Source of the DNA: Macrostomum hystrix
Lineage: Eukaryota; Animalia; Platyhelminthes
Reading direction: 5' to 3'
Assembly (NCBI GenBank): GCA_950097015.1
Contig: CATNEN010000002.1
Coordinates: 3,224,001 to 3,288,000 of the forward strand
Length of the DNA stretch: 64,000 nucleotides
Shown here: piece after piece, positions 9,093 to 47,535 of the stretch
Numbering within the stretch: position 1 is the stretch's first letter
Layout: each line of letters begins with the position of its first letter
The notes under the pieces: generated by a model
The model's input: only the letters and a program-made list of their open reading frames with translations
Database searches by the model: none
Told to the model about the DNA's origin: nothing
Program-made: the position numbers and the translations under genes

Positions 9093-9362
<270 letters not shown>

Positions 9363-14722: not shown

Positions 14723-15728
14723 CTACAAGGACTCGACTTCGTCACAGGAATATCCGTAATCCTCAAAGCAGCCAGCGCCATCAGCATCTGATCGCAGAGG
14801 CAGCTGTAGGGCTTCACCAAGCCTCTTGTCATGCGAGCAGTTGCAGACTCCAAGACGTACTTTCGAGGCCAGCATCCGACAATTCTTGTGGCAGTATTTC
14901 TGGCAAAACCTGCAAGCCAGGGAAGTCTGGTCGGAACTGCAGCTGCCGCATTCCGTTAGCAGCTGCATTGGAAATTGGTCCGATCCGCCGAACTCTCTGG
15001 TGCACGAGGAGTTTATCTTGACGCCCTTCAAGTTCATGCCGCTGTTTGAAACACGAATCTCAATTAAGTGCATCTCCGCGTCGAGTAGACCCAGCGATCT
15101 GAAAAAGGGCTATGAAGTTTTTATCGTTGATTTATCGCGATATTTTTATATAGAGAAATGAATCAACTTCTTGCCTGTCATCTTCAAATTTGAATGTACA
15201 CTGTGTCAACGAAGCAGATGACGTGGCCGCCCCCACCAATACGCTGCCAGCTAGCAGTCTTGGAATCTGCAGAACAGGTGCAGCTAGAGTCCAACGTGAT
15301 TGGTAGCTGACTCGCTTGCCGAGAATGACTTCCCGAACAAAGTGCTCGCAGTTGTTGGTGATTGGGTTGTAGCCAGCCTTGCCAACTCGGTAGAGGCACT
15401 CGAGAATCACTTCCGACCTCTTTCTTGCAGTGCAGCTGCAGCTGTACACCCGTATGGTGCACTTCTGCACAATGTCTCTGAAGTCGTCCAGTCTTACTGA
15501 TACCTTCGGTACCGTGTTGGCGTCTCCGGAGAGGTGGCAGAGCAATGGAATCGGCTCATTGTGCTCCGAGTTGTCTCGCTTTGGCCAGGCCCAGCCAAGG
15601 AAGATAGCGAAGTGGTAGAAGCCGATCCTATTGAAGCCGACAGCGGAGCCAGGAATGGCGGCCCTGATGGCATCTTCGGTCCTCTTCGAGTCAAAATCTT
15701 CGTATCCGTTTGTGAAGCCAACGCACAT
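14723..15728 (-). CDS. LRAT/PLAAT-like + UBR-type zinc finger, copy 1 (309 aa); exons 15728-15175 and 15098-14723, GC-AG intron
   Basis: HFAIFLG, LCHLSG and NNCEHF form the H-H-C triad. Exon 2 reads CTREFGG...CGSC...CRFCQKYCHKNC...CNC. The phase-2 intron is at the same position as in the paralogs. Confidence 0.85.
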
Positions 15729-17100
15729 TTTCTGTCTGTCTGTTTGTGTAGCGAAAATTCTAACTGCTTGGACAAAACGACTGCATCAACCGCCTTTATC
15801 TTTCTCTCCGTCTCAGCAACAGTCCTATAACGGACTAAGAGCCTAACAGATAATTCCACAGGCTCCAAGCTGTGCACTTCAGATTCAAGCTACTACCTAA
15901 ATCTAAAGATAACGCATCGCTTCTCAGCACACACAAGCTACGTGTTGATAGAATTCGCACAAAAGGTTGGCTCAGAAAAGTCTCTCTATTGAGCTTTGGA
16001 AGTCCGATGTAGCAATATGAATTCTGCCAGCAAGTTGCATGAAAGTTCTGACTTCCATTGTTCTGGACTACTCTGATACCCCTACTGTACTCACTAAACT
16101 CAATCCGAACTAAGCTCTATAGTCCTCTCTATTATGGCAATTTCAGGGCCTTCTGGTCCAGGTCTCTGGGGCTGTTGATTGGGCTTCGCATTCTAATCGG
16201 TCAGCATGAATATACTTTATTGAATACCGAAAGGACTTGACTGCCTCGCATTGACGATTGAATAAGAGGCCATTAAGCTACAAAGTTGGCTGGTCCGCGT
16301 GCAAAGCTAAAGCTTCAGTCTTGTACATATAGCACTGAATAAGGATTAGGAACTTCCGTAAAGCTGGTCACAGATAATATAGACATATATATATCATATA
16401 TACATATGTCGAGAGGGCTCATGGTTAACGTTTATCGGAGAAACTTCTGAACTTCTTCTTGTTGCTTCGTTGTAGAATTTCTCACTGCTAACTTCTATCT
16501 ATTCCTTTTTGTGATAACTAACTTTGTTATCTAATATTAATTGCGAAATGCTATCTCATTCAACCGCGAATTTTAACTCCCATATAGCCCAGGCAGCTCA
16601 GAGCAGTCGCAATCAGTTCACTTCCAAGTATTACGATGAGGGTGTCTGGGAGGATATAAAAGGTCTCATTCAGACGTATTCCACAATAGGAATCGTTCTC
16701 ACAATCGGTGATTTTAATGCAAGGACGAGATCAATGCAAGCAAATTGTGGTCCTCATTTCCGTAGAGTTCGGGAAAAAACAAACATGGCCTCCAACTCTT
16801 AGAAGTTTGAGTTTGAGTTTGAGTATATCCAATCCTTAGGCTTGGATATACTCCTAACCAATGGTCACTAGCATTGGTAAGCCCAATCTACAAGACTGGG
16901 TCTCGCAGTGATCCAAAAAAACTACAGACCAATAAGCGTCCAGCCAGCCATCGCAAGACTGTTTGCATCAATTATTTACGAGAAATTAGAAGCACACATC
17001 AAAGACCTGAACTTAGTATCGGCTAGTCAAATAGGAAACAGAAACTTCCGAAACTGCCGGACTTCCGATCACATTGCAACCCTATTGACATTAATTCATA

Positions 17101-17820
17101 TGTAGTGACAGTGGTCGGTTTGAGATCCCCGGCCCACAGCCCTATGAAGTAAAATATTATCGATCACTGAACCAGGCGTTAGGACGCTCTGTTGCAGTCA
17201 GGGACTGGTGGCGTTAGGACGCTCTGTTGCAGTCAGGGACTGGTGGCGTTAGGACGCTCACACAGTACTTCTAAGATTATTACAGTACTCCGTGCGGACC
17301 TGGCACCCTGAAAGGACAGACACAAATACAGTGCTTACCGGTCGGGACGCACGATAGGAGGGCAGGATGACGCTGAATGTATTTGTCGGCAATTTTTGCA
17401 CTTTAATAAACCATACGCTCGGAATCACTCGTCAATAATCACTTCGCTATGCAATAAATTGAGCCTTCGCCGTAAGAGACCGTCTTTACGGCACGATCTT
17501 TTAAAGTTCGCAAGGGGGGGTAGGCCTGGCCCGGGCAGAAAACGATACCTTAAGGGCTGACAAGGGGGCAGACAGGGGCGGAGCACAAACAAAGCCTACA
17601 GCGCGCTGGGGGGGTAGTGTTGTACGCGCTGGACGGGTGGACGGGCAAAGCTACGCAGAGCTGATTGGCGTGAGGGCAAAGCCACGCAGGGCTGGGGTAG
17701 GATAGGCACACAATGCCCGCGCCCAGCCAATCAGATGGCGGCACCGGGCACTCTGAGCCAAGACGGCGTTGGGTGAGGAAGGCCTAACAAAACCACAAGG
17801 CCAGAGACACCGGCACCACA
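17101..17820. mobile_element. Solo LTR (720 bp) with 4-bp TSD
   Basis: Termini TGTAGTG...CACCACA, flanked by CATA/CATA. Removing it restores the RT frame (LIH-KKKKMKRPSHLVFFDLK). It contains internal 35-bp direct repeats at about 17176-17260. Confidence 0.85.
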
Positions 17821-18300
17821 CATAAAAAGAAGAAAATGAAAAGACCTTCCCATCTAGTTTTCTTTGATTTAAAAAGCGCCTTTGACATGGTTCACCACCC
17901 AACCCTAGTCACACGATTGAAGCAGTTGGTCGTGAACCCAGCAATAAAAAGTACCATTGAGAGTATGTACTCAAGCGCGAAATTTCATCTCAAGGTGTCA
18001 GAAGGCACAGCTACTGAGGCGTGTCGAATCACTAATGGCGTCAGGCAAGGATGCCCCCTATCTCCACTGCTATTCTCCCTATACATCGACCCGCTAAGCA
18101 GAATTCTATAAGACTCATTTCAAAGCCATACCTCCATATTGAATGAAGAAGTAAACAACTTGCTTTATTGTGACGATTTAGTCATTTTTGGTGTAGACCT
18201 GACAGAATTACAAAAAGGCCTCGACGAAGTAGCCGATTTTTGCAATACTCATAAATTAGAAATAAACATTGAGAAGACAAAGCTTCTGAGCTTCAATCTC

Positions 18301-18500
18301 CAATCTCCATCTCAATCTCCATCTCAATCTCCATCTCAATCTCCATCTCAATCTCCATCTCAATCTCCATCTCAATCTCCATCTCAATCTCCATCTCAAT
18401 CTCCATCTCAATCTCCATCTCAATCTCCATCTCAATCTCCATCTCAATCTCCATCTCAATCTCCATCTCAATCTCCATCTCAATCTCCATCTCAATCTCC
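18301..18500. repeat. 12-bp tandem repeat (CAATCTCCATCT), about 17 copies, inside the LINE RT
   Basis: Read directly; reads SQSP in the RT frame. Confidence 0.97.
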
Positions 18501-20312
18501 AACACAATCGAGCGTAGACAGTTTTTACATGGTCAACTGGTTGAACCCGTACAGCAGTGGAAATATCTTGGGTTTCACATGAACGTGAAGGAAATAATAG
18601 ATGCTCATTCCATAGAACTAGGCAAAAAATGGATATCCAATAATGCTTATGAGAAAGTTGGCGGGATTTCAGAGAGTAAAACACAAACAGCCTGTTTAGC
18701 ACAAACTGGGTCTTCTGAAAACTGGGTACTTGGGATCGGAACCTTTATCCTTTATCTCTCTATCGGAAAAGAGAGAATTACTAATTTTAGAATCTGCAAG
18801 TCGATTCTGCAAGTTAGTCCAAACACTGACAGCAATGGTGCTCGGTCTGAATTAGGAAGACTACCACTGTTATATAGTATTCAAAAAAGAAGCCTTCAAT
18901 ACTGGTCCTCAGTTCGGAGCCGACCAGACTCCATCATCGCGAAATTGGAGGCAGATACAGAATACAGCGATGTTGGCATTGGGGAAAAATGAGTAGTGAA
19001 GTAATGCGGAATTGTCAACAGACTAGAAAAACAGTCCATCAAAACGCACAGGGAGAACTTTGAGTCAGAGTTTCGAAGGCACTGGACTCAGAGGATGGGA
19101 AAATCAGCCAAGCTCAGCCACTTCTTCTACACGTTTAAGAAAGATTTCTTCCGAGAAAAGTACCTAACAATAATCTCAAACCCAGAACAAATGCGCACAA
19201 TGTCCCGATTTCGTCTAGGAAACCACAAACTGGCCTGTGAGACATTGCGCACTGTAAGAACGAAAATCACCTATGAAAACAGAACATGCCCAAAATGTAG
19301 AGTCGAGGTAGAGAACGAAACTCATATTCTCTTTAGATGCGATTGGTCCGTTTATGTTCCAATTAGAAATAAATTCATAGAGAAGGTGGCAGGTACTGTT
19401 CGAAATTTCGAAAGCCTAACAGCTGATGACAAAATTGTGTATTTAACGACACAGGAAAGCACAGAATTAACAGAAAGTTTTGTGGACTTCATAGAAAGCA
19501 TAATTAAAGCTAGATAAAAAGCCACTGCCCTGAGGCCCATAGTTAGAATGTTTAGAAACACAAGAGCTATTCTTCTTTCGGTCAGTTTTAATTTTCTAGT
19601 TAAATTTAAATATTTCATTTTTTGTTTTAATGCCTTTGTTATTTCAGAAATTTGTTTTTTTTCAAATATTTTACTCACCTAAAATTAATCTTATGCTGCT
19701 ACTGTTTTCCTATCGCCTTCTTTTTAAAAAATCGAATTGTTCAGCCTCAAACATAAAATTAACAAAAAAATCAGCACTCAATCGGCGTGCGCACCTCAAT
19801 AAAAAAATAATTATAGAAATTAACTAATAAAAATAATATATGTTAGTTAAGAAAATCATTAAAATACAAAATTGTACTTTAGCTTAAGTACTAAAAAGTC
19901 TGTCCTGCTTATTTTGCTAAACGTGGTGTATTGATAATTTTTTGCTACTCGTTAGGAATTATCGGAGCTGAGTATAATACAAGCACCAGGATACGCATTT
20001 AGGGACATACACAGGTGTGAACACACAGGTGTGAACATCTGCCCTGAATATTGTCAAACAGTTAGTTTACAGGCTCATTGTCTCTTGGAAGTTGACCCTC
20101 TCTAACTCACAGGCGCATAAATTGCAAAGCAATTCCGCAAGCCGTTCACCCAGTCTGCGCCCTAAATTAATGTGACCTCGGCACGGATTCGATCTTGCAG
20201 GAACTTCGGTGCAAAATCCAGACCCCTTAACCACTCCGCGACTCAACCCCCTTGGAATAGGTCTCCTTTGTTCACTTAGGGTTTGAGTAACTCAGTCACC
20301 ACAATAATAAGA

Positions 20313-21040: not shown

Positions 21041-23003
21041 ATGTGCGTCGGAGTTTACGACGAATTCGGGTCGTGGCGTTTCGACGCCGCCTTGAAGTCC
21101 ATGGTGCCTGGCTCCGCCGTGTCTTTCGATCGAGGATCTCTCCATCACTTCGCCATCTTCCTGGGCTGGGCCTGGCCTATGGGAGGCGGCTCGAACCCCC
21201 TGCCGCTGCTAGGACACCTGACAGGAAGTCCGCATACACGACCCCGCGCCTCTGTGCGTCTTGACGACGTCCGTGATGTTGTCCAGGGAAGCTCTGTGCG
21301 GGTGTACCGCTGCAGTTGCAGTTCAGCCAAGCGAGCTCGCGTCATCGAGGAGTGCCTTCGACGAGTTGGCGAAGAGGGATACAATCTGGTCACCAACAAC
21401 TGCGAGCACTTTGTGCGTTCGCTGATCGATGGCAGGAGCGTCAGCTACCAGACGCGTTGGACGATGGCGCTGCCAATCATCCAGCTGCCCAGACTGGTCA
21501 TTGGCATCACAGGGATAGTGGTGCCACTGCTGAGGTCGGGACAGAGGGCCCGGCTGCTGCAAGATGACAGGTGAGGCTTAGTGACTTGTGGTGCATTCTC
21601 TCATTTTCGGAAAAAATAACGTCACTTTTCTAGAAAAACCAAGGACGCTTCTTGTAATTTGCTAAAGTTGTGTACAGAGACCAGAGTAGGCATTGTAAAG
21701 AGAAATTAAACATCAAATGCTTTCGATCGAAAAGCTATACAATTAGTTTCGACAAGATCATTGAGATATCATGCATAAAAGAACTTATTTTGACAAACGG
21801 CTATACCGTTAAGGCTTTTGCCTCTCGCACCAAGGTCCCTGAGCTCGATTCTGCAGCGAGGCCACATTCATTTGAGGTGAAGCCACGGAGAAAAGGCTTG
21901 GGGGGCTTGTCGTGTGATTCACGCCCTTCAGGCACCGAACTGGAAGGCACAGTGAAACTGTACACTGCCTGAAAATGAGAAAGTCATGGCAGACGTGCAC
22001 ACCTGTATGCCTGCAGGTATGCCTGCGTAAAGCATCTGCGTGTGTCACCAAATGATATGCCGTTGCCCGCAGCCCTCCTGCAATTATTATTGCTATTATT
22101 AACTATTAACTATTATTAGCTATTATTAACAGCTGGACTGCCTAGCCATTTTGCCGCCTGTTTTTATGCCAAGAAGGTGGGTTTTGGCAGCGCCTGAATG
22201 CTAACAGCCTTGGGTGGTGACAGATTGGTTGACGGACAAGGCGATGGTGTCCTGTGGTTCAGCTGCGCCTAATATTTGGGCTTGATGAGTAAAATCGGAT
22301 AAATTCGCGTCAGGGTGTCCATAGTGGCTTAGTTCCACCTGTTGTAGCCGTTGAAGGTCCAGCAGCTCCGTCTAGATAAAGGTAGGCGACCACTGAAGAC
22401 GGCGATGATGCAGGCACATTCGGGTGACATGCTGATAAATTTCGAAGGCCTGGCAAGGCCGCACTGAGGCGCAGTGCTAATTTGTGTATAGGGGTGCATG
22501 AAATACACTAGCGCTTTTATAAAAAATCCGACCTTCAGCCAGAACCACTGAATATCTTGACGTTCGGAAAACCTGGCGACTTGATTCTTGTTTCAGAAGA
22601 TGCGCAAAAAAAAGTTGGCCCGTGTTCTTGAGTTTCGTCTGCTTGCGTTGCTCCATTCGGGTGCAGCACAAAAATTTATCAGGCAGTTCTTGGTAGTTCT
22701 ACTGTTAACTTATTTTGACTCCACAGCTACCTCGGCCTCATCGACCCCGAGTCCAGACTGCTGTTAATCCGGCCTCAGCACGGCGGCCTTAGAGTGGAAA
22801 TTCAGCGAGCCACGTGCTGCACCCGCTGCTTCACGGGCGCGAATTCACAGGCTGCGCAGACTCTGCACCACTGCATCGACTGCCGCCTGGTTGGAGCTTC
22901 GGCTGTGTGCGGAAACTGCGCCCGAAGCTGCCACAGGAACTGCTTGACTCGACGACTTCAGACTCGTTTGGTAGGATTCTGTAGCTGCCACTGCTGTCTT
23001 TAG
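21041..23003 (+). CDS. LRAT/PLAAT-like + UBR-type zinc finger, copy 2 (268 aa, the only copy on +); exons 21041-21570 and 22727-23003
   Basis: MCVG start; HHFAIFLG, LGHLTG and NNCEHF. Donor GACAG|GTGAGG, acceptor CCACAG|C in phase 2. Exon 2 reads CCTRCFTG...CIDC...CGNCARSCHRNC...FCSC. Confidence 0.85.
21800..22125 (+). mobile_element. SINE family B copy in the intron of copy 2
   Basis: GGTCCCTGAGCTCGATTCTGCAGCGAGGCCACATT...GCCCGCAGCCCTCCTGCAATTATTATT. Confidence 0.78.
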
Positions 23004-29800: not shown

Positions 29801-31445
29801 CAGCTTCAGACAGCTCGTCACATCGAGGCAGGTTGGCACCAGAAGCAGCTTCAGACAGCTCGTCACATCGAGGCAGGTTGGCACCAGAAGCAGCTTCAGA
29901 CAGATCGTCACATCGAGGCAGGTTGGCACAAGAAGCAGCTTCAGACAGCTCGTCACATCGAGGCAGGTTGGCACCAGAAGCAGCTTCAGACAGCTCGTCA
30001 CATCGAGGCAGGTTGGCACCAGAAGCAGCTGCAGACAGCTCGTCACATCGAGGCAGGTTGGCACCAGAAGCAGCTTCAGACAGCTCGTCACATCGAGGCA
30101 GGTTGGCACCAGAAGCAGCTTCAGACAGCTCGTCACATCGAGGCAGGTTGGCACCAGAAGCAGCTTCAGACAGCTCGTCACATCGAGGCAGGTTGGCACC
30201 AGAAGCAGCTGCAGACAGCTCGTCACATCGAGGCAGGTTGGCACCAGAAGCAGCTTCAGACAGCTCGTCACATCGAGGCAGGTTGGCACAAGAAGCAGCT
30301 TCAGACAGATCGTCACATCGAGGCAGGTTGGCACAAGAAGCAGCTTCAGACAGCTCGTCACATCGAGGCAGGTTGGCACCAGAAGCAGCTTCAGACAGCT
30401 CGTCACATCGAGGCAGGTTGGCACCAGAAGCAGCTGCAGACAGCTCGTCACATCGAGGCAGGTTGGCACCAGAAGCAGCTTCAGACAGCTCGTCACATCG
30501 AGGCAGGTTGGCACCAGAAGCAGCTTCAGACAGCTCGTCACATCGAGGCAGGTTGGCACCAGAAGCAGCTTCAGACAGCTCGTCACATCGAGGCAGGTTG
30601 GCACCAGAAGCAGCTGCAGACAGCTCGTCACATCGAGGCAGGTTGGCACCAGAAGCAGCTTCAGACAGCTCGTCACATCGAGGCAGGTTGGCACAAGAAG
30701 CAGCTTCAGACAGATCGTCACATCGAGGCAGGTTGGCACAAGAAGCAGCTTCAGACAGCTCGTCACATCGAGGCAGGTTGGCACCAGAAGCAGCTTCAGA
30801 CAGCTCGTCACATCGAGGCAGGTTGGCACCAGAAGCAGCTTCAGACAGATCGTCACATCGAGGCAGGTTGGCACAAGAAGCAGCTTCAGACAGCTCGTCA
30901 CATCGAGGCAGGTTGGCACCAGAAGCAGCTGCAGACAGCTCGTCACATCGAGGCAGGTTGGCACCAGAAGCAGCTTCAGACAGCTCGTCACATCGAGGCA
31001 GGTTGGCACCAGAAGCAGCTTCAGACAGATCGTCACATCGAGGCAGGTTGGCACAAGAAGCAGCTTCAGACAGCTCGTCACATCGAGGCAGGTTGGCACC
31101 AGAAGCAGCTTCAGACAGCTCGTCACATCGAGGCAGGTTGGCACCAGAAGCAGCTGCAGACAGCTCGTCACATCGAGGCAGGTTGGCACCAGAAGCAGCT
31201 GCAGACAGCTCGTCACATCGAGGCAGGTTGGCACCAGAAGCAGCTTCAGACAGCTCGTCACATCGAGGCAGGTTGGCACCTGGCAGCTGGCATCGATGTC
31301 GGAGCTGAAGTGGCAGATCACGGGCAGCGGCTCTGAGCCGCCCTTGGACCAGCCCCAGCCAATGAAAATGGCGAAATGGTAGAGCGAGACTCGGTTGAAG
31401 CTGACACAAGAGCCAGGAACCAGGGCGGCCATGGCTGCGTTGCAC
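26850..31445 (-). CDS. C2H2-ZnF + tyrosine recombinase-like + PWWP ORF; unique core 29555-26850 (901 aa from MMESS), preceded in frame by the 45-bp array
   Basis: CPYC...SEHFQRRH and CPIC...LASHLANWH fingers. YR-like boxes NRAD, HDHKTA, NALRHFF and MNHSRAEALKSY (H to Y spacing +9). PWWP GDLVHAKFSTYPFWPAMVC...IHVQFFETPPTRMWID. No stops or introns. Confidence 0.75.
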   Translation of the reverse strand: MQRSHGRPGSWLLCQLQPSLALPFRHFHWLGLVQGRLRAAARDLPLQLRHRCQLPGANLPRCDELSEAASGANLPRCDELSAAASGANLPRCDELSAAASGANLPRCDELSEAASGANLPRCDELSEAASCANLPRCDDLSEAASGANLPRCDELSEAASGANLPRCDELSAAASGANLPRCDELSEAASCANLPRCDDLSEAASGANLPRCDELSEAASGANLPRCDELSEAASCANLPRCDDLSEAASCANLPRCDELSEAASGANLPRCDELSAAASGANLPRCDELSEAASGANLPRCDELSEAASGANLPRCDELSEAASGANLPRCDELSAAASGANLPRCDELSEAASGANLPRCDELSEAASCANLPRCDDLSEAASCANLPRCDELSEAASGANLPRCDELSAAASGANLPRCDELSEAASGANLPRCDELSEAASGANLPRCDELSEAASGANLPRCDELSAAASGANLPRCDELSEAASGANLPRCDELSEAASCANLPRCDDLSEAASGANLPRCDELSEAASGANLPRCDELSEAASGANLPRCDELSAAASGANLPRCDELSEAASGANLPRCDELSAAASGANLSEDDDALASSLLQELVNDDYNFPFLLPDQRPMMESSATVDEENVIRFVNQQNECVLSKDDSGCSTTKATTEFVCYLDPTKHVIVGSRIAEHFQRYHFEETLLKSKKDIRDELYAFNKARHQSIQSTVDIVEVVPKKLADKTNCQDRQGSDYVCPYCEIFVIKNSRFSEHFQRRHPEKLAEKGAKFCIDETKEYNQPIVSTGTAGRPCPICNIPFVYLASHLANWHKLSKEESQKLMLDEKKQKAADHVEQSWQQKKIQASQNKAPVAAPPGFPTIKHFEEHLQGYAGAKNAGSTALGLRRALNAVLNHIQAESILDLIKEANRTSITSFLTEKSNAHADPCKPYVTALTRFGEYLKSTYLGLIEAEGLGAQLDSFIITCSCYGKSRQRDKNRAEVERRLKLDKNLLSVEEAKMICDVIQSFKPAAEACLDSKECVLFLGLNFMFSRGNANRADIVSNAKVKEFEEWKSNSDPEALFEVHDHKTAVKGPVFVSVYEFKDLLLAYGDHRIKAGAKSDDKFFGFSAPNHSFSTFLRVCRKQFSNLGSITRMSANALRHFFESKNREININDVEKQGLVSYGMNHSRAEALKSYMANTLTHTRAVQDAKRSTFDLVFGHQTKVHVTDLDADDLETDKVISTESGVAEPAVRKKASSRKRQSDSSSSEKPRKAPKPADASLEPAEVTKIDKNCANLDADKVISTESGVAKPAVRKKASSRKRQSDSSSSEKPRKAPKPADASLEPAEVTKIDKNCANLDADKVISTESGVAKPAVRKKASSRKRQSDSSSSEKPRKAPKPADASLEPAEVTKIDKKGVNLDAGEIKHSLRQKHEQMCKSFNCGDLVHAKFSTYPFWPAMVCNDPCTLTHTKGQRIHVQFFETPPTRMWIDLGRIKPFDTFDRPESADPELLNAFSMANEATVFFNREERLARYLIDE
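27205..27770 (-). repeat. Coding 186-bp (62-aa) basic Ser/Lys/Arg-rich repeat x3 between the YR and PWWP domains
   Basis: Period 186 (27221 and 27407); peptide DKVISTESGVAKPAVRKKASSRKRQ... Confidence 0.95.
29649..31280. repeat. 45-bp tandem repeat, about 36 copies (EAASGANLPRCDELS in the YR frame)
   Basis: Unit GCACCAGAAGCAGCTTCAGACAGCTCGTCACATCGAGGCAGGTTG; open in two minus frames and two plus frames. Confidence 0.97.
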
Positions 31446-31492
31446 TCATGCGCCTTGAAGTCGTCAAAGCCGTTGGTGTATCCGACGCACAT
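31275..31492 (-). pseudogene. LRAT/PLAAT-like copy 3, 5' half only, fused to the 45-bp array
   Basis: MCVGYTNGFDDF...YHFAIFIGWGW...ICHFSSDIDASCQVP then the repeat. The NCEHF motif and the zinc-finger exon were not found downstream. Confidence 0.8.
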
Positions 31493-32490: not shown

Positions 32491-33445
32491 TCATCTCATT
32501 CTGCATTTCCTCTGGCGATTACCTTCCAGCTTCATGAGAGCTTCCATTCTGTTGTTGGCAAACTTGATTTGATCTGCACTGTACGCATCGCACACGGTGC
32601 ATTCGCAGATGCCGCTGCCCTCAAACTGGTAAAGATTTCCGCTGAGTCTCTGATGGCAGTGCGTCAAGCAGCTCCTACAGATCGCGAGTTCTGGCGCCAG
32701 TGTATTCTTGAGATCGTTTCCCAAGTAGCGCCTAGTGCAGGTTTCATTGACTGACGAGACCAAATTTAAGCCATGGTTGAATAGCTTCATCTCTATGAAG
32801 TTTCCTTCTGGGTCTAGAAGACCGAGGCTCCTGAAAGCGAAACACGAGCGTAAATCTAAGCATTTTGTCTTGCCATTTGCATTCAACAGATAAAGCTTAC
32901 TTGTTTTTTAGGCCTTTCTTGCCGCCCAACGAGAAAGAGGATGTTCTCGCTCCGCTTACTGACCCGCCGAATACTAGTCGAGGAATGGACAGCATTGGCA
33001 GCAAGAAGAACCAAAGAACTTGAAAGCTGAAAGGGTTTCCGTTAATGACCCATCGGACAAAGTGCTCGCAGTTATTGGTCACAATGTTGTAATCACGCCT
33101 TCCCACAAGGTCCAGGCATTGTTTAATAACTGTCGCTCTTTTTTGGACGCTGCAGCTACACTTGAAGACTCTAATAACTGAGCTTTCTACTACATCTCGA
33201 ACATCTTCGAGTCGAACAGACGCTTTCGGCTGCGTGCCTACCTCGCCAGAGAGGTGGCAGAGCAGCGGGATGGGCTGAGCAGACTCCTCATCCCGCGGCG
33301 GCAGTGCCCAACCCAAGAAGATGGCAAAGTGGTCCAGGGCGATTCGGTTAAAGCTGACAGCGGAGCCAGGTACCATGGACTTCAGTGCCAAATCTAAATT
33401 TAATGGCGAAAAATCTTCGAAACCGTTTGTAAAGCCGACGCACAT
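32491..33445 (-). CDS. LRAT/PLAAT-like + UBR-type zinc finger, copy 4 (294 aa); exons 33445-32901 and 32830-32491
   Basis: MCVG start; DHFAIFLG, LCHLSG and NNCEHF. 70-bp phase-2 GT-AG intron. The finger lacks the first CxxC pair. Confidence 0.85.
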
Positions 33446-34077: not shown

Positions 34078-34388
34078 ATGATAATAACAATAATAACAAT
34101 AATAATAATAATTGCAGGAGGGCTGCGGGCCTGCAGTAGCACATCATTTAGTGACACTAGACCCGCAGCCAGTGAGGAGGCAATTCTTCCCATTTCGCTG
34201 ACTCCTGAGCACACACACACAGATACTGTACGCAGGCATACGCTCACACAGGTGTGTACATCTGCACGACAAGCCCTCAAGCCTTCTCTCCGCGGCTGCG
34301 CTCCAAATAAATGTGGCCTCGCCGTGGAATCGAACTTAGGGACCGTGGTGCGCGAGGCAAACGCGATAACCGCTCTGCCACCGACCGC
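34078..34388 (-). mobile_element. SINE family B copy; a further partial copy lies at about 34790-34960
   Basis: Reverse-complement match to family B with an (AAT)n tail. Confidence 0.78.
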
Positions 34389-36145: not shown

Positions 36146-37069
36146 CTACGTGAGGACCCTGCTTGACGACCCGTCGCGCTCTGGACGCGGGGATTGGCGC
36201 GAAGCTTCTCCCTTCAGAGCGTGGGAGCATTGGCACAAGCCTTCGGACACGTCTTGGCAGGCAATGACAGTGCAGTTCTTGTGGCAGTACTTCTGGCAAG
36301 GCTTGCAGACTAAGGCGCCGCGGCAGTTGCAGCACTTGAACAAGGCTTGCCTCGAGAAGGCGAACTCGCAAGTGCATGTGGAATTCAAGCGAACTCCTTG
36401 AAGCTGGAGGCCTCCGTTTGACACGAGAATCTCCACGAGGTCCATTTCCGGGTTGAGAAGGCCTAGCGATCTAGAAATAAGGCATGCACTATTATGGTGT
36501 GTCGCAGAGCTTTGCGCGATCGGTAGATAATAAAATTACCTGTTTCCCTCTAAACTGGAAATGCACATTGTTGATAGCGAGCAGCAGGCGGTGGCCAGCG
36601 CGCCGATGATCATTCCCGGAAGCTTGGACAGCGGCGAAGCCCGCATTCGGCGGATCTGGTAGCTGACGCTTTCTCCGCAGATCACTTGCCGGACAAAGTG
36701 CTCGCAGTTGTTGCTCATAATGTTGAACCCCATTGAGCCAACTCGGTACAGACATTCCAGAATCACCTCAGATCGCTTGCTAGCTGTGCAGGTGCAGCTG
36801 TACACCCGGATAGTGCAGTTCTGCACAATATCCCTAAAGTCGTCGAGTCGCACAGAAGCGATGGGTTTGGTGTTCGGGTCGCCAGACAGGTGGCAGAGGA
36901 GGGGAATGGGCTCCTCGCCGGCGCCTCGCGGCCAGGCCCAGCCCAGGAAGATGGCGTAGTGTGAAAAGCCGACCCTGTTGAAGCTGACTGCGGACCCGGG
37001 CACCAAGGCGTTGATGGCGTATTTGAATCTTCGAAAATCTTGGTAGCCGTGCTTGAACCCGACGCACAT
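36146..37069 (-). CDS. LRAT/PLAAT-like + UBR-type zinc finger, copy 5 (284 aa); exons 37069-36540 and 36470-36146
   Basis: MCVG start with an in-frame TGA 18 nt upstream; SHYAIFLG, LCHLSG and NNCEHF. 69-bp phase-2 intron. Finger CTCEF...CCNC...CKPCQKYCHKNC...CQC. Confidence 0.87.
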
Positions 37070-42930: not shown

Positions 42931-42977
42931 ACTATGTAACCCAGTTGTAGGCACATATTTGTCCCGCAAGGTCTCAG

Positions 42978-44138
42978 CTAAGCTCGGGTTCGAGTATTGC
43001 TGTCTTCCAGGGCCTCAATTTGTCGATGCTGGCAGTCGCAGTAGCCGTTCGGGCTCTCGGCTTCCTTCAACCTGCGGATACGGCAGTCAGCGTGACAGTC
43101 GGCCGCACAGTGTCGGCAGATGTATTTGGGATCAACAATGCCGCAGCTGAGGCACTCCAGCAGCACTTGACAGGAGCTGAGGTTCTCGCCGGTGAAATCG
43201 CGACTGCACCTGGGACTGACGCGGATCTTTGTGCCCAGGGGCCGGAAGGTGACCTCAAGCATTTCCAGCTTGGCGGATACGAGGCCAAGGAGCCTGAGAG
43301 TGAGTTGGCAGTACATGCGGCAGTAAGTGGTTGATAGCAATTCACAGGAGCTGTCCCCTGTACACAAATACGTAATCGCTACTGCAGCCCATCATTACTT
43401 GACAGTGGCGTAGCCAGGATTTTTGTCTAGGGGGGCCGCCCATTTTGGGACGTCACTACCACGGGGGCGTCACTAGTTTCATCAATTCCCCAGCTACTCT
43501 CACCAGCTCTGATCCCAATCAGCCAGTGGATCTGGCAGTTCATCCAAGATGCTGCACTGCGGCTCAGAGGCGGAGACAGCTCGTCGCAATCTTTTGATGA
43601 GCCAGGACGCTCCGGCAGTCAACTCAGTGCCGAGAAGAGAGGCCGAAATCCAGCCAGTCATTCGAAGAAATTTCTGCTTAACCTGCTCAACAACGACTGG
43701 CTGTTCGGCAACGGCGACAATCTGCCTGATCAGAGCAGAGCAGCAACCGCCAGCTAGACTCCGGTAGCGTAGGAAGCACTGGGAGATCCTGGCATCCCGG
43801 TCCTCAGCTGAACAATCACACTGATAAACTCTCAGAGCGGTGGATCGCAGCGCCAGGTCGTGAAAGCTAGCCAGACGCTGCTCGCCGCCGATCAAGTGGC
43901 TAACAAGGTGCACGGGCTCCAGCTCCACAGTTCCCGCTTTGACCAGCCAGGCCTGGCCGAGGTAGAGACCAAAGTGACGATGGCAGGTGAGGTCGCCATC
44001 GGATGCATCGGCTTGCAACACGAAACTCACCGGAGCGCCGACTGAGACTCTGATCAACGCCTGGGCAATGCCGGTGTACGGTCGGCTGGTCAAGTCAAAG
44101 TCACAGCAGCGCTGCCTTTCCAGAGAGTCGAGACACAT
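42978..44138 (-). CDS. Divergent LRAT/PLAAT-like + UBR-type zinc finger, copy 6 (316 aa); exons 44138-43504 and 43293-42978
   Basis: MCLD start; RHFGLYLG, VSHLIG and LRVYQCDCS; GGCCSALIR in place of NNCEHFVR. Same phase-2 intron. Finger CSRDFTG...CLSC...CRHCAADCHADC...YCDC. Confidence 0.75.
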
Positions 44139-44969
44139 CTTTAGATTTGAAACCAGAATTGCGTAAAATTGTCTTTTCCGAGCAACTTCGAGAAAGCCGC
44201 AACAAATACGCGACGATGAATACACGTAGCTTTGCACAATGCCAATTAGGAACCACGCAAACAAGATGCAGAAATTCTGTCTGTGTTTTTCTGGAATTTT
44301 CCTGGAAATTTTCACTAGAAAGACGCGCCGAAAATAAGTTGCTTTTTGTGAGACAGTGAGACTCAAATTTAATTTTCGTATCAGAGCTTGTGTTTTATTT
44401 TTAGCTAACCCAAACAACTTGCTTCGAGTTTGACTGTTTATTTGCTTCTTATAACTCAAGCAGCTTTCGGTTTTATCAACTTTGCGTCCCGTGATTTATG
44501 AACTTTGGCGTCCGAAATACGTCCGAAAGACGTCCCGAAATATGACAAAATCTTAAAATAAATATATAATTTACATGAGAAACTTCTACCTGTAGATTAG
44601 CAGGTGCCACTTCACGCATACAGCATTGCGGAATAGGAGGAAAATATTGATGACAGACGGAATCAATGAGGAACAGTGACAGTGAAAGGTGGAGTGAGCT
44701 GGAATGAAAGGTAGACTGAGGGGTAGAGTGAGGTAGAGTGAGAGGTAGATTAAGAGGTAGAGTGAAAGGAAAAATGAGTGAGGCGACCTTCAGGAGACCG
44801 GCCTACCCCTTCCCATCACCTACAAAAGAGATTCTCAACCCTTTAGAGACGAAAAGGTGATCTTGTATACCAATAACACTGCAAGACTGATTAAAACAGT
44901 TAGTTTTTATTACAATTGTACTTTTACGGTTGCTTTAAGTTCGATCTAATCATACATGGAGCTCGCGAT

Positions 44970-47535
44970 CTAGTTGAGTTTTTGAGAACCCAGACTCCCA
45001 GCTTCATTGGTTAAGGGCACCTGTTTGCCCGAGCTGGTGGGGCGCATCTTGTGCTGGCAGTCGCAGAATCCCGGGCCGTCGTTGAAGCCACGCGTGTCGC
45101 AGTCGACGTGGCACATCAGCACGCAGGCTCGGCAGACGACCTTGTCGCCGGTGATGCCGCAGCTGAGGCAGTGGAAGAGTTCCTGCTCGATGCTCTGGTT
45201 AGGCCCTGTGTAAACCTTGGTGCAGCACGGGTTCACATCGACCGTGGCAGAAAGTCCCGATCCGTTGACTCCGATCTCAATTAGATCCATGTCGGGATTG
45301 ATCAGGCCTAGGGATCTGCCGGAGTAGTTTTTCTAGATCAACGTAGGGCTAGGAACAATAAGAATTGGTAATCATTTTTTTACTTTGCGCTACAGGGTCC
45401 CTGGCAGCTCAATCTCCTGGCCAGTCAAGACACCATCGCTAGGCTTGTCTGGATCCCTGGCAGCTCAATCTCCTGGCCAGTCAAGACACCATCGCTAGGC
45501 TTGTCTGGATCCCTGGCAGCTCAATCTCCTGGCCAGTCAAGACACCATCGCTAGGCTTGTCTGGATCCCTGGCAGCTCAATCTCCTGGCCAGTCAAGACA
45601 CCATCGCTAGGCTTGTCTGGATCCCTGGCAGCTCAATCTCCTGGCCAGTCAAGACACCATCGCTAGGCTTGTCTGGATCCCTGGCAGCTCAATCTCCTGG
45701 CCAGTCAAGACACCATCGCTAGGCTTGTCTGGATCCCTGGCAGCTCAATCTCCTGGCCAGTCAAGACACCATCGCTAGGCTTGTCTGGATCCCTGGCAGC
45801 TCAATCTCCTGGCCAGTCAAGACACCATCGCTAGGCTTGTCTGGATCCCTGGCAGCTCAATCTCCTGGCCAGTCAAGACACCATCGCTAGGCTTGTCTGG
45901 ATCCCTGGCAGCTCAATCTCCTGGCCAGTCAAGACACCATCGCTAGGCTTGTCTGGATCCCTGGCAGCTCAATCTCCTGGCCAGTCAAGACACCATCGCT
46001 AGGCTTGTCTGGATCCCTGGCAGCTCAATCTCCTGGCCAGTCAAGACACCATCGCTAGGCTTGTAGGGTCCCTGGCAGCTCAATCTCCTGGCCAGTCAAG
46101 ACACCATCGCTAGGCTTGTCTGGATCCCTGGCAGCTCAATCTCCTGGCCAGTCAAGACACCATCGCTAGGCTTGTAGGGTCCCTGGCAGCTCAATCTCCT
46201 GGCCAGTCAAGACACCATCGCTAGGCTTGTCTGGATCCCTGGCAGCTCAATCTCCTGGCCAGTCAAGACACCATCGCTAGGCTTGTCTGGATCCCTGGCA
46301 GCTCAATCTCCTGGCCAGTCAAGACACCATCGCTAGGCTTGTCTGGATCCCTGGCAGCTCAATCTCCTGGCCAGTCAAGACACCATCGCTAGGCTTGTAG
46401 GGTCCCTGGCAGCTCAATCTCCTGGCCAGTCAAGACACCATCGCTAGGCTTGTCTGGATCCCTGGCAGCTCAATCTCCTGGCCAGTCAAGACACCATCGC
46501 TAGGCTTGTCTGGATCCCTGGCAGCTCAATCTCCTGGCCAGTCAAGACACCATCGCTAGGCTTGTCTGGATCCCTGGCAGCTCAATCTCCTGGCCAGTCA
46601 AGACACCATCGCTAGGCTTGTCTGGATCCCCAGTCACAAGCTTCCATGTGAATGAGCTCGCAGTCAGCCAATTGCCAAACATCCAGAGCGTCAGTCCCGT
46701 GGCCCTCCAAGGCTCAGGAATATCTAACCTCACTGGTCACACGGCTGCTAAGCTATAGGCACTGCTTCCTTCGAGGGTCCCTCCGGAGTGCATGGACTTT
46801 GTCCCCTTTGTGCGAAGCGGGTCTTCAGGCATTAGCGATATGGGCGACTCCCGCTTCCTCGCTGCGTGTACGGACCACCCAACAGCTTAAGTCAAGTAAG
46901 TCGAGTTGTGGGCCACATACATGTACAGCCAGTGACAGTTGCGTCTGATACAATGTCCCAATAGAAAGCAAAGCCAGGCAGCAAATCAAAACTCACCCGA
47001 TCTTCGTCAGTCCGATGGCCACGCAGGAGCTGGACGAAGTGATGGAGCCTCCAAGTGGCGCACCGATTAGCAGCCTGGGCAGCTGCACAATCGGCGCGGC
47101 GAATGTCCAGAAGGCCTGGTAGCTGAAGCTGCGATTGTTGATGACGTGGCGCACGAAGTGCTCGCAGTTGTTCGTCACCAGGTTGTAGCCCTCCTCGCCG
47201 ACCCGCGCCAGGCAGTCGCGAATGACGCGCATCCGTTTGGCCGGCTGGCAGCGACACTTGTACACGCGCACAGTCGAGTTCTGCACCACGTCGCGCAGAT
47301 CGTCCAGTCGCACGGAGGCCATCGGGACGGTTCTGGCGTCGCCAGAGAAGTGGCAGACTAGCGGGATAGGCTCGTCTAGAGTCTCCTTGGGCCAGGCCAG
47401 GCCCAGGTAGATAGCGAAGTGGAACAGGCCGATCCGATCGAAGCTGATGGCGGAGCCCGGTGTCATGGCTGCCACGGCGTCTTTAACCTTCCAGTAGGGG
47501 AAGTCTTTGTAGCCGTTGGTGAAGCCGACGCACAT
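44970..47535 (-). CDS. LRAT/PLAAT-like + UBR-type zinc finger, copy 7 (294 aa); exons 47535-46997 and 45315-44970
   Basis: MCVG start; FHFAIYLG, VCHFSG and NNCEHF. 1.68-kb phase-2 intron. Finger CCTKVYTG...EQELFHCLSC...CRACVLMCHVDC...FCDC. Confidence 0.85.
45396..46630. repeat. 56-bp tandem repeat, about 22 copies, in the intron of copy 7
   Basis: Unit CTGGCAGCTCAATCTCCTGGCCAGTCAAGACACCATCGCTAGGCTTGTCTGGATCC; three 55-bp variants. Confidence 0.97.

What the first reader, a model, noticed from the sequence alone, without database searches (positions are those of the whole stretch)
14723..47535. Seven-member cluster of LRAT/PLAAT-type enzyme genes fused to a UBR-box-like zinc finger
Seen in sequence: six complete genes and one truncated copy. 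Each complete gene has exon 1 encoding an H-box/NC catalytic domain (HFAIFLG...CHLSG...NNCEHF, then a hydrophobic segment) spliced by one conserved phase-2 intron to exon 2 encoding a Cys/His finger (C...CxxC...CxxC...CHxxC...CxC). Established knowledge: this H-H-C permuted NlpC/P60 fold is the LRAT/PLAAT acyltransferase-phospholipase family, and the finger pattern resembles the zf-UBR domain of FBXO11-type proteins. Inference: I do not know this fusion from characterised proteins. The copies differ substantially yet five keep the full NNCEHF motif and all six complete genes keep open frames, which points to a selected lineage-specific expansion. They may be ligand- or degron-sensing lipid-modifying or protease-like effectors, and they lie next to an RBR ligase.
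Basis: partly seen in the sequence, partly recalled or inferred. Interest (0 to 1): 0.85.

Follow-up and report, generated by a model that had tools for sequence, protein, structure and literature searches.

The report
Flatworm PLAAT-like enzymes fused to UBR box
A flatworm (Macrostomum-type) genome carries a tandem cluster of expressed two-exon genes that join a PLAAT/LRAT-type lipid-modifying enzyme domain to a UBR-box zinc finger, a combination found so far only in this genus and never studied.

Summary
There are six complete genes (A, B, D, E, F, G) and one truncated copy (C) at exactly the stated coordinates. Each complete gene has an LRAT/PLAAT exon joined by a phase-2 intron to a Cys/His-finger exon.

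- **Splicing:** intron-less contigs, read as transcripts, in four public runs join the exons of copy E (4 of 4 runs) and copy D (2 of 4) at the predicted GT-AG sites.
- **Enzyme domain:** it passes Pfam LRAT (41-53 bits against a cut-off of 24.3) and models onto PLAAT2/3/4 (Z 12-13).
- **Finger:** it is a genuine UBR box of the UBR4/UBR5/FBXO11 type. The profile against PDB gives E 7e-8, and the copy G model fits the UBR4 box at 0.9 Å.
- **Ligand site:** the aspartate that holds a substrate's N-terminus is kept only in F and G, so most copies are probably not classical N-recognins.
- **Distribution:** an exhaustive search of 1.84 billion proteins found the fusion only in Macrostomum lignano, as unstudied predicted proteins. 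No paper mentions it.
- **Age and selection:** paralogs pair with M. lignano orthologs, so the expansion predates the species split. dN is below dS, although dS is saturated.
- **Sister genes:** in M. lignano the same LRAT module is fused to a caspase.

Function is inferred, not shown. This is a new domain architecture built from known parts.

The parts
15175..15728 (-). Copy A exon 1: Met-Cys start, LRAT/PLAAT domain (HFAIFLG, CHLSG, NNCEHF), hydrophobic APxxQIPRL segment, Ser-rich linker
   Evidence: Pfam LRAT E 2.1e-10, 41.4 bits. Model. A GC donor sits at the site homologous to the M. lignano junction; an alternative GT donor lies 33 nt upstream.
14723..15098 (-). Copy A exon 2: beta-strand lead-in plus a UBR box with the full Cys/His ligand set. 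Asn stands at the UBR4 Asp1715 position.
   Evidence: Pfam zf-UBR E 1.6e-4, below cut-off. Member of profile A2, which hits the UBR4 box at E 6.9e-8.
21041..21570 (+). Copy B exon 1 (LRAT domain, NNCEHF kept)
   Evidence: tblastn E 3e-61 to copy A. GT donor and phase 2.
22727..23003 (+). Copy B exon 2 (UBR box; the protein ends right after the CxC..CC motif). The intron is 1156 nt.
   Evidence: Groups with M. lignano P0002 (97/100).
31259..31492 (-). Copy C: truncated exon 1 (first ~80 codons, with the H-box and second His). Homology stops where a 45-nt tandem array begins. No NCEHF and no finger exon.
   Evidence: tblastn E 6e-25 over residues 1-81 only. Tandem array 29649-31280.
32901..33445 (-). 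Copy D exon 1 (LRAT domain, NNCEHF kept)
   Evidence: Pfam LRAT E 6.9e-14. Contigs cover 32902/32926-33504.
32491..32830 (-). Copy D exon 2: UBR-like finger lacking the CxxC pair and the Cys after CHxx (one zinc site lost). Glu stands at the Asp1715 position.
   Evidence: Alignments. Joint 32829-32900 skipping 70 nt in runs X2 and X4.
36540..37069 (-). Copy E exon 1 (LRAT domain, NNCEHF kept)
   Evidence: Pfam LRAT E 2.1e-12. Contigs of ~1300 nt in 4 of 4 runs.
36146..36470 (-). Copy E exon 2 (UBR box, full ligand set; Gln at the Asp1715 position). The contigs run on to ~35735, read as the 3' UTR.
   Evidence: Joint 36470-36540 skipping 69 nt with GT..AG ends, 4 of 4 runs, no mismatches.
43504..44138 (-). 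Copy F exon 1: highly diverged LRAT-like domain. His/His/Cys remain at the aligned positions, but NCEHF is replaced by a CCSAL-type stretch.
   Evidence: tblastn E 5e-11 to copy A. No Pfam hit. Long branch. Alignment.
42978..43293 (-). Copy F exon 2: intact UBR box with the canonical aromatic-Cys-Asp-Cys ligand-site motif
   Evidence: Pfam zf-UBR E 5.6e-5. Alignments.
46997..47535 (-). Copy G exon 1 (LRAT domain, NNCEHF kept)
   Evidence: Pfam LRAT E 1.9e-13. phmmer against PDB: PLAAT4 E 9e-5, with the H-box and NCEHF aligned.
44970..45315 (-). Copy G exon 2: UBR box with Phe-Cys-Asp-Cys as in UBR4. The intron is 1681 nt.
   Evidence: AF2 pLDDT 83. Foldseek: UBR4 box 8j9r at rmsd 0.9 Å over 56 columns, 32% identity.

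Best explanation
**Shown**
- The region is a tandem cluster of a Macrostomum-specific gene family.
- Each protein starts Met-Cys.
- Next comes a PLAAT/LRAT-type NlpC/P60 domain with the Cys-His-His catalytic residues.
- A conserved, moderately hydrophobic segment (APxxQ[IL]PRL) follows, at the place where PLAAT1-4 carry their membrane anchor.
- After a Ser-rich linker and a short beta-strand lead-in comes a three-zinc UBR box of the UBR4/UBR5/FBXO11 subtype.
- At least two copies are transcribed and spliced as predicted.
- The paralogs are older than the split from M. lignano and have been kept intact.

**Inferred**
- The N-terminal domain works like PLAATs. Its cysteine takes an acyl chain from a membrane phospholipid as a thioester and passes it to water or to an acceptor.
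- The hydrophobic segment holds the enzyme at a membrane surface rather than spanning it. A 100-residue zinc domain behind it is hard to reconcile with tail-anchor insertion.
- The UBR box acts as a protein or peptide recognition module that decides where or when the enzyme acts.
- Each paralog probably has its own ligand, because the residues lining the UBR ligand pocket differ from copy to copy while the zinc ligands are fixed.
- Only F and G look able to bind a free N-terminus in the classical way.
For: - **Architecture and frames:**
- **Splicing and expression of D and E:**
- **LRAT domain:** Pfam 41-53 bits against a 24.3 cut-off. PLAAT4/PLAAT2 are the nearest solved sequences. The AF2 model of ortholog P0001 has pLDDT 82 and pTM 0.81, and PLAAT2/3/4 fit at Z 12.2-12.8, rmsd 2.5-3.6 Å over ~100 residues.
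- **UBR box:** the profile against PDB gives UBR4 6.9e-8, FBXO11 2.2e-5 and UBR1 8e-4. The copy G finger model fits UBR4 at 0.9 Å, and its top 13 hits are all UBR4/5/6 boxes.
- **Zinc ligands:** they are invariant across 10 family members, and the same cysteines and the histidine stay invariant when outside UBR boxes are added.
- **Variable pocket:** residues equivalent to UBR4 Phe1713/Asp1715 are V/N, F/S, I/E, L/Q, Y/D and F/D in A, B, D, E, F and G. The roles of these residues come from PMC10687169.
- **Evolutionary rates:** the finger changes about 2-3 times faster in dN than the LRAT domain.
- **Orthology:** B pairs with P0002 (97/100). A and E group with P0001 and P0004 (97/99).
- **Relatives with a tail anchor:** P0025 and P0017 are LRAT proteins ending in a clearly hydrophobic C-terminal stretch, the classical PLAAT layout.
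- **PLAAT chemistry and anchor dependence:** PMC4624172.
Against: - No enzyme activity, metal content, ligand or localisation has been measured.
- The hydrophobic segment is only borderline: Kyte-Doolittle 19-residue maxima are 1.3-2.0, with Pro, Arg and Gly inside. It is modelled at pLDDT below 50, so membrane association is a guess.
- The alignment of the second catalytic His rests on motif position, not on the HMMER alignment.
- Pfam zf-UBR stays just under its cut-off (21.9-23.6 against 25.2 bits).
- dS is saturated in every pair, so the dN/dS values (0.12-0.47) are rough.
- Variability of the pocket could reflect relaxed constraint rather than different ligands.
- Expression of A, B, F and G was not tested.
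- The four runs are not labelled as RNA. That reading rests on intron-less contigs and on empty intergenic bins.
Confidence: 0.5

Rival explanations
1. The proteins are N-degron-gated effectors. The UBR box binds free destabilising N-termini, such as neo-N-termini made by proteases or the protein's own conserved N-terminal Cys after Met removal. This binding switches on, or recruits, the PLAAT-type membrane-attacking domain.
For: - The box belongs to the UBR4/5/6 subtype.
- F and G keep the aromatic-Cys-Asp-Cys motif. Its Asp and backbone hold the alpha-amino group in UBR2 and UBR4.
- Every family member, including the caspase-fused paralogs, begins Met-Cys. Only 3 of 137 other LRAT hits do, and all three belong to this subfamily or close to it.
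- Sister genes fuse the same LRAT module to a caspase and lie next to LRAT-UBR genes in M. lignano.
Against: - Asp1715 is replaced by Asn, Ser or Gln in A, B and E, and by Arg, Gln, Arg and His in four M. lignano members.
- The FBXO11-type (UBR6) box is, from general knowledge not checked here, not known to bind N-degrons.
- No binding data exist.
- The Met-Cys start could equally serve lipidation.
Confidence: 0.12
2. The finger does not read peptides. It would be a lipid-binding (C1-like, diacylglycerol) module, or a purely structural zinc module that stabilises or dimerises the enzyme.
For: - One M. lignano member is auto-named 'Phorbol-ester/DAG-type domain-containing protein'.
- Pfam C1_1 gives a weak hit, E 0.025.
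- The pocket residues are poorly conserved.
- pTM 0.81 for the two-domain model hints that the finger region packs against the enzyme.
Against: - No C1 domain appears among the PDB profile hits (E up to 10) or the listed fold-search hits, whereas UBR boxes fill the top ranks.
- The C1 score is 14.9 bits against a cut-off of 26.5.
Confidence: 0.2
3. The NlpC/P60 domain acts on proteins rather than lipids, as a cysteine peptidase, isopeptidase or protein acyl-transferase. The UBR box would present the substrate, possibly in a ubiquitin-related pathway together with the neighbouring RBR ligase.
For: - There are weak Pfam hits to Peptidase_C97/PPPDE (E 5.8e-4 in G).
- The NlpC/P60 superfamily includes peptidases (PMC10318531, listed).
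- UBR boxes normally sit in ubiquitin ligases.
- An IBR-containing gene lies 6.5 kb from copy A.
Against: - LRAT scores are far higher (up to 52.6 bits against 20.2), and the NCEHF motif and nearest structures are PLAAT-type.
- The PPPDE score is below its 29.2-bit cut-off.
- No RBR neighbour was listed in the M. lignano loci.
Confidence: 0.13
4. The cluster is neutral debris of recent duplication, with copies drifting toward pseudogenes and the exon join of no functional consequence.
For: - Copy C is truncated.
- F has lost the NCEHF motif, and D has lost one zinc site.
- Transposon and repeat insertions lie between the copies.
Against: - Six spliced frames are open even though synonymous divergence is saturated.
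- Splice sites and intron phase are conserved in all six.
- D and E are transcribed and spliced.
- Paralog lineages are retained in two species.
- The zinc ligands are invariant.
Confidence: 0.05

Closest known systems
PLAAT1-5 / HRASLS phospholipase A-acyltransferases (LRAT family, Pfam PF04970)
   Same: - Same fold (Z 12.2-12.8 to PLAAT2/3/4).
- Same H-box His and NCEHF Cys.
- A hydrophobic segment directly after the catalytic domain, where PLAAT1-4 have their membrane anchor (PMC4624172).
   Different: - Only 22-30% identity.
- A ~15-residue insert lies between the H-box and the second His.
- The hydrophobic segment is internal, only weakly hydrophobic, and carries a conserved Q-[IL]-P-R-L core.
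- A ~110-residue exon with a UBR box follows it.
- A conserved Met-Cys start.
UBR boxes of UBR4, UBR5 and FBXO11/UBR6 (the all-Cys 'subfamily 2' of PMC10687169)
   Same: - Same zinc-ligand spacing and fold: 0.9 Å to 8j9r, and E 6.9e-8 by profile.
- F and G keep the Phe/Tyr-Cys-Asp-Cys ligand-site motif.
   Different: - It is attached to a lipid-enzyme domain instead of a ubiquitin-ligase scaffold.
- CHxxH is replaced by CHxxC.
- The domain ends shortly after CxC-x-His/Cys.
- The alpha-amino-binding Asp is replaced in most copies.
- One zinc site is missing in copy D and in M. lignano P0003.
Uncharacterised M. lignano 'LRAT domain-containing proteins' (P0001-P0005, P0156 and P0157; e.g. PAA49923.1, UniRef A0A267FR73)
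   Same: - Same two-domain architecture.
- An intron of similar size (~74 nt) between the LRAT and finger parts in the M. lignano gene for P0001.
- Same tandem clustering.
- 45-76% identity, with ortholog pairs to copies A, B and E.
   Different: - Different species.
- These database entries carry only the LRAT annotation. The UBR box is not annotated, and one entry is labelled as a phorbol-ester/DAG-type domain protein.
M. lignano LRAT-caspase fusions (P0009, P0010, P0154; 'Caspase-8-like')
   Same: - Nearest LRAT relatives outside the fusion family (E 5e-22 and 1e-21).
- Same Met-Cys start and NNCEHF motif.
- One such gene lies immediately upstream of LRAT-UBR genes.
   Different: - The C-terminal domain is Peptidase_C14 (E 5e-32 and 3.5e-37) instead of a UBR box.
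- There is no hydrophobic segment.
- The second His is replaced by Gln.
- None is present in this window.

Membership tests
LRAT/PLAAT family (Pfam PF04970, NlpC/P60 clan) | Sequence match to the family profile above the curated cut-off | tested here: met
   A 41.4, D 52.6, E 47.8 and G 51.2 bits against a cut-off of 24.3. B was not scanned but is 52-57% identical to A and D. F gives no Pfam hit and is recognised only through its paralogs.
LRAT/PLAAT family (Pfam PF04970, NlpC/P60 clan) | Cys-His-His(/polar) catalytic residues: H-box His, second His, Cys of NCEHF | tested here: met
   The HFAIFLG-type H-box, the C/G-H-L/F-S/T-G second His and NNCEHF are present in A, B, D, E and G. The H-box and NCEHF align to PLAAT4. 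The second His is assigned by motif position only. F keeps His, His and Cys at the aligned positions in a degenerate context.
LRAT/PLAAT family (Pfam PF04970, NlpC/P60 clan) | Permuted papain-like alpha/beta fold of PLAAT catalytic domains | tested here: met
   AF2 model of ortholog P0001, residues 10-140 at pLDDT around 90 or above. PLAAT2/3/4 fit at Z 12.2-12.8, with Foldseek probability 1.00.
LRAT/PLAAT family (Pfam PF04970, NlpC/P60 clan) | C-terminal transmembrane anchor needed for interfacial catalysis (PLAAT1-4) | tested here: inconclusive
   A conserved hydrophobic segment sits at the homologous place, but it is internal. Its KD19 maxima are 1.3-2.0, with Pro, Arg and Gly inside, and its pLDDT is below 50.
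LRAT/PLAAT family (Pfam PF04970, NlpC/P60 clan) | Phospholipase A1/2 or acyltransferase activity through a thioester intermediate | not testable with these tools
   Needs recombinant protein assays.
UBR box (Pfam PF02207 zf-UBR) | Sequence match to the family profile above the curated cut-off | tested here: not met
   Best scores are 21.9-23.6 bits against a cut-off of 25.2. Five of 10 family members hit at E 4.5e-5 to 2e-4. The family's own profile nevertheless hits solved UBR boxes: UBR4 6.9e-8, FBXO11 2.2e-5, UBR1 8e-4.
UBR box (Pfam PF02207 zf-UBR) | UBR-box fold | tested here: met
   Copy G finger model at pLDDT 83. It fits UBR4 8j9r at rmsd 0.9 Å over 56 columns with TM 0.73 by target. 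Its top 13 hits are all UBR4/5/6 boxes. In the full-length model UBR6 scores Z 7.5 and UBR4 Z 6.2.
UBR box (Pfam PF02207 zf-UBR) | Cys/His ligand set for three zinc ions | tested here: met
   The pattern C..CxxC..CxxCxxxCHxxC..CxC is present in A, B, E, F and G, and the core ligands are invariant in 10 members. D and M. lignano P0003 lack exactly the CxxC pair and the Cys after CHxx, which amounts to one site. Metal binding itself was not measured.
N-recognin type of UBR box (binds free destabilising N-termini) | Asp that binds the substrate alpha-amino group (UBR2 Asp150 / UBR4 Asp1715) next to an aromatic residue (Phe148 / Phe1713) | tested here: not met
   It is met only in F (Tyr-Cys-Asp-Cys) and G (Phe-Cys-Asp-Cys). 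A has Asn, B Ser, E Gln and D Glu. The M. lignano members have Arg, Gln, Arg and His. Residue roles come from PMC10687169.
C1 (phorbol-ester/DAG) domain, PF00130 | Profile match above cut-off | tested here: not met
   14.9 bits against a cut-off of 26.5, E 0.025, in one member only. No C1 structure appears among the fold or profile hits.
PPPDE / Peptidase_C97 | Profile match above cut-off | tested here: not met
   The best score is 20.2 bits (copy G) against a cut-off of 29.2, far below the LRAT score for the same stretch.

The most novel reading that the evidence does not exclude
The family is an N-terminus-reading membrane-rupture or cell-death switch. The UBR box senses a neo-N-terminus, made by a host or pathogen protease or by the linked LRAT-caspase paralogs. 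Alternatively it senses the redox or arginylation state of the protein's own conserved N-terminal cysteine. Either event would release a PLAAT-type phospholipase onto organelle or pathogen membranes. That would be a route from N-degron-style recognition to lipid destruction without ubiquitin.
Probability: 0.1. Interest if true: 0.9.

Novelty: new variant of a known kind. Interest (0 to 1): 0.6.

Why it matters
UBR boxes are known as the substrate-reading parts of ubiquitin ligases. PLAAT enzymes are known as tail-anchored phospholipases that remodel or rupture organelle membranes. A natural fusion of the two has been kept as a multi-gene family in two Macrostomum species. It suggests that a UBR-type reader can steer something other than ubiquitination.

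The paralogs form a natural series: the pocket Asp is kept or replaced, one zinc site is present or lost, and the catalytic motif is intact or degenerate.

The same LRAT module is fused to a caspase in neighbouring M. lignano genes, which points to a possible role in cell death or defence. From general knowledge, M. lignano can be manipulated by RNAi and transgenesis, so the questions are testable.

At a practical level, the M. lignano database entries lack the UBR-box annotation.

Tried and rejected
1. **Other organisms.** I looked for the finger exon next to the two nearest non-M. lignano relatives: L001 (ENA contig, P0014 plus P0008) and L002 (Logan contig, P0007). tblastn, a Cys/His regex and a six-frame hmmsearch with the finger profile found nothing within 10 kb and 2.7 kb downstream. 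The fusion therefore cannot be extended beyond Macrostomum. Those genes may be plain LRAT-plus-hydrophobic-tail proteins.
2. **Hidden fusions.** I scanned all 150 best hits of the exhaustive search with the finger profile. Only M. lignano proteins combine both domains. The other finger hits are multi-UBR-box repeat proteins without LRAT.
3. **ESM Atlas.** Searches by shape and by sequence features gave only single-domain matches.
4. **Shared lead-in.** I tested whether the beta-strand lead-in of exon 2 is shared with the caspase fusions. An apparent LNP-D/E-M resemblance is not significant, and the caspase genes do not have the intron at that place. I dropped the idea.
5. **Caspase in the window.** There is none.
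6. **C1-domain and PPPDE readings.** Both are below their cut-offs.
7. **Literature.** 'LRAT' with 'UBR box' and 'Macrostomum' with 'LRAT' returned zero papers. A broader NlpC/LRAT/caspase search listed nothing relevant among its top 10 of 23 papers.
8. **dN/dS.** Pairwise Nei-Gojobori estimates are limited by saturated dS, and many pairs are not computable.
9. **One-use tools.** I spent them on copies D and E, so A, B, C, F and G have no transcript evidence.

Full report
**1. What is there**

A tblastn of the exon-1 and exon-2 peptides of two copies against the window gives seven exon-1 matches and six exon-2 matches. Each exon-2 match lies downstream of an exon-1 match on the same strand. 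Reading the junctions and locating them exactly gives six two-exon genes with open spliced frames:

| Copy | Strand | Exon 1 | Exon 2 | Protein |
|---|---|---|---|---|
| A | - | 15728-15175 | 15098-14723 | 309 aa |
| B | + | 21041-21570 | 22727-23003 | 268 aa |
| D | - | 33445-32901 | 32830-32491 | 294 aa |
| E | - | 37069-36540 | 36470-36146 | 284 aa |
| F | - | 44138-43504 | 43293-42978 | 316 aa |
| G | - | 47535-46997 | 45315-44970 | 294 aa |

- Every intron is phase 2. Each sits just before a conserved S/Y-L-G-L-[LIV] motif.
- Five donors are GT. Copy A has GC at the site homologous to the M. lignano junction, and a frame-preserving GT 33 nt upstream.
- Copy C (31492-31259) keeps only the first ~80 codons. 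Homology ends where a 45-nt tandem array of 36 units begins (29649-31280). That array runs into a large ORF with a PWWP domain.

**2. Are the exons joined in RNA?**

Four public runs of one study hold about 47% of the sampled words of 32400-37200. Their contigs cover the two genes at 100% identity and leave several intergenic stretches empty (33527-34009, 34493-34653 and 34976-35619). I therefore read them as transcript assemblies, although the runs are not labelled as RNA.

- In all four runs one contig of ~1300 nt covers about 35730-36470 and 36540 to between 37088 and 37116. It skips 69 nt with GT..AG ends on the gene strand. That is exactly the predicted copy E intron.
- In two runs a contig skips 70 nt between 32829/30 and 32900/01, the predicted copy D intron.

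**3. The enzyme domain**

- Pfam LRAT is hit well above its cut-off by A, D, E and G.
- phmmer against PDB sequences finds PLAAT4 and PLAAT2, with the H-box His and NCEHF aligned.
- An AlphaFold model of the M. lignano ortholog P0001 has pLDDT 82 and pTM 0.81. It was built on a 42-row alignment that includes the window's exons.
- The model superposes on PLAAT2/3/4 at Z 12.2-12.8 with 23-30% identity (Foldseek).
- PLAAT chemistry rests on a Cys113-His23-His35 triad, and PLAAT3 activity depends on the C-terminal hydrophobic anchor that PLAAT1-4 carry (PMC4624172).
- A, B, D, E and G keep all three catalytic motifs. F keeps His, His and Cys at the aligned positions but has lost the rest of NCEHF, gives no Pfam hit and sits on a very long branch.

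**4. The hydrophobic segment**

After the catalytic domain comes a segment with a conserved A-P-x-x-Q-[IL]-P-R-L core. It is also present in the two non-Macrostomum relatives P0007 and P0008.

- Its hydropathy is borderline, and it is modelled with low confidence.
- More distant relatives, P0025 and P0017, end in a clearly hydrophobic C-terminal stretch.
- I infer that the segment descends from the PLAAT anchor. With a ~110-residue zinc domain behind it, it more likely lies in or on one leaflet than spans the bilayer.

**5. The finger**

- Individual fingers hit Pfam zf-UBR just below the cut-off.
- A profile of ten family fingers hits the solved UBR boxes of UBR4 (E 6.9e-8), FBXO11/UBR6 (2.2e-5) and UBR1 (8e-4). 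PHD fingers appear only at E above 0.05.
- The exon-2 product of copy G folds with pLDDT 83. Its top 13 Foldseek hits are UBR boxes of UBR4, UBR6 and UBR5, the best at 0.9 Å over 56 columns and 32% identity.
- The domain is therefore a UBR box of the all-Cys subtype described for UBR4-7 (PMC10687169).
- The zinc ligands are invariant. The exception is that D and M. lignano P0003 have lost exactly the three Cys ligands of one site.

In UBR2 and UBR4 the substrate's alpha-amino group is held by Asp150/Asp1715 and the backbone of Phe148/Phe1713. The equivalent pairs here are:

| Copy | Residue at Phe1713 position | Residue at Asp1715 position |
|---|---|---|
| A | Val | Asn |
| B | Phe | Ser |
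| D | Ile | Glu |
| E | Leu | Gln |
| F | Tyr | Asp |
| G | Phe | Asp |

Only F and G look like classical N-terminus binders. The pocket is the most variable part of an otherwise fixed scaffold. About 30 residues of beta-strand precede the box. They are specific to this family and were matched by few of the listed solved chains.

**6. Distribution**

- A word-seeded search of 5.8 billion proteins with copy D exon 1 found five proteins, all from Macrostomum lignano, at 43-58% identity.
- An exhaustive HMM search of 1.84 billion cluster representatives, using a full-length profile, found only two clusters covering both domains. Both are from M. lignano.
- All other hits are LRAT-only or UBR-only.
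- ESM Atlas searches gave only single-domain matches.
- The M. lignano entries are annotated only as 'LRAT domain-containing protein', and one as a phorbol-ester/DAG-type domain protein.
- No paper in the library mentions the combination.
- The window's best identity to M. lignano is 66-76% (A to P0001) and about 70% (B to P0002). The source is therefore a related species, not M. lignano itself.

**7. Evolution**

- On a maximum-likelihood tree B pairs with P0002 (97/100). A and E group with P0001 and P0004 (97/99). The paralog lineages therefore predate the species split and were retained in both species.
- M. lignano shows the same tandem arrangement, with an intron of similar size (74 nt) in the gene for P0001.
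- Pairwise Nei-Gojobori estimates give dN below dS for every whole-gene pair that can be computed (ratio 0.12-0.47). dS is saturated, at 1.4 or more over whole genes, so these are rough bounds.
- dN is 0.14-0.37 in the LRAT domain and 0.38-1.0 in the finger region for the non-F copies.

**8. Relatives with another C-terminus**

The nearest LRAT relatives outside the fusion are M. lignano proteins P0009 and P0010. They carry a caspase domain instead of the UBR box (Peptidase_C14, E 5e-32 and 3.5e-37). One such gene lies directly upstream of LRAT-UBR genes.

All members, including these, begin Met-Cys. Among 137 other LRAT hits only three do: P0010, the first exon of the L001 relative, and P0025. 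Notes from this scan report further LRAT architectures elsewhere in the genome, which I did not check.

**9. Mechanism**

*Shown:* the architecture, the splicing of D and E, the identities of both domains, the intact catalytic and zinc-ligand sets, the restricted distribution and the retention across species.

*Inferred:*
- PLAAT-like acyl-thioester chemistry on membrane phospholipids.
- Peripheral membrane association through the hydrophobic segment.
- A UBR box that recruits or gates the enzyme through a paralog-specific protein or peptide ligand.

*Rivals:*
- A classical N-degron switch. This is plausible for F and G only.
- A non-peptide or purely structural finger.
- A protein-directed NlpC/P60 activity.
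- Neutral decay. This is largely excluded.

The adjacent RBR-type gene is real (IBR, E 8e-22 at 7160-8182), but there is no evidence of a functional link.

**10. Verdict**

This is a new, genus-restricted domain architecture made from two well-known domains, with unknown function. I score it as moderately high interest rather than very high. No activity or ligand is known, and most copies lack the residue that would make the 'degron-sensing' idea straightforward.

The read-laying run stayed under 6,000 letters.

Noticed in passing
window 26850-31445 (-), arrays 29649-31280 and 27197-27766: A mechanical ORF of 1531 codons combines three parts: a 45-nt tandem array (36 units) that abuts truncated copy C, a body with a PWWP domain (Pfam E 1.5e-11), and three 186-nt repeats. 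Another note of this scan reads it as a tyrosine-recombinase-like element. It probably accounts for the truncation of copy C.
   Followed up: partly
window 7160-8182 (+), with ORF 5921-6967 upstream: An RBR-type gene with three IBR stretches (Pfam IBR E 8.3e-22) lies 6.5 kb from copy A. No IBR gene was listed beside the M. lignano LRAT-UBR loci inspected.
   Followed up: partly
L005:10001-13406 and 14063-18035 (M. lignano NIVC01001035.1): An LRAT-caspase fusion gene ('Caspase-8-like', LRAT plus Peptidase_C14) sits directly upstream of two LRAT-UBR copies. As far as the searches here show, this is a second unstudied LRAT architecture. Its second catalytic His is replaced by Gln.
   Followed up: partly
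first codons of all copies (e.g. window 15728-15723, 47535-47530): Every family member, including divergent copy F and the caspase fusions, starts Met-Cys. Only 3 of 137 other LRAT hits do. The conserved Cys2 could be a lipidation site or an N-terminal-Cys signal. Neither idea was tested.
   Followed up: partly
exon-1 donor sites (e.g. window 36539-36536, 32900-32897): In B, D, E, F and G the phase-2 donor (GTAA or GTGA) puts a stop codon one codon after the exon end. An unspliced mRNA would therefore encode an LRAT-plus-hydrophobic-tail protein resembling ordinary PLAATs. This may simply follow from the donor consensus.
   Followed up: no
window 34010-34492 and 34815-34975: These repeat segments between copies D and E have contig depths of about 400-10,800, against about 7-25 for the genes. 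They carry many variant letters and joints, which suggests an abundant, expressed, multi-copy element.
   Followed up: no
window 16524-19517 (+): Between copies A and B lie ORFs resembling a reverse-transcriptase or LINE fragment, interrupted by a long (SPSQ)n-coding microsatellite at about 18290-18510.
   Followed up: no
L001:9749-10513 and L002:3833-4405: Two contigs from unidentified organisms (an ENA assembly and a Logan run) encode close relatives of the LRAT exon, 40-60% identical to the window copies. They have the same conserved hydrophobic Q-[IV]-P-R-L motif (the L001 gene also the MCVGFTNGY start) but no detectable finger exon downstream. The L001 gene has an extra intron inside the LRAT part.
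   Followed up: partly
window 3212-3796 (+): An ORF with a WW domain (Pfam E 3.9e-6) lies upstream of the RBR gene.
   Followed up: no
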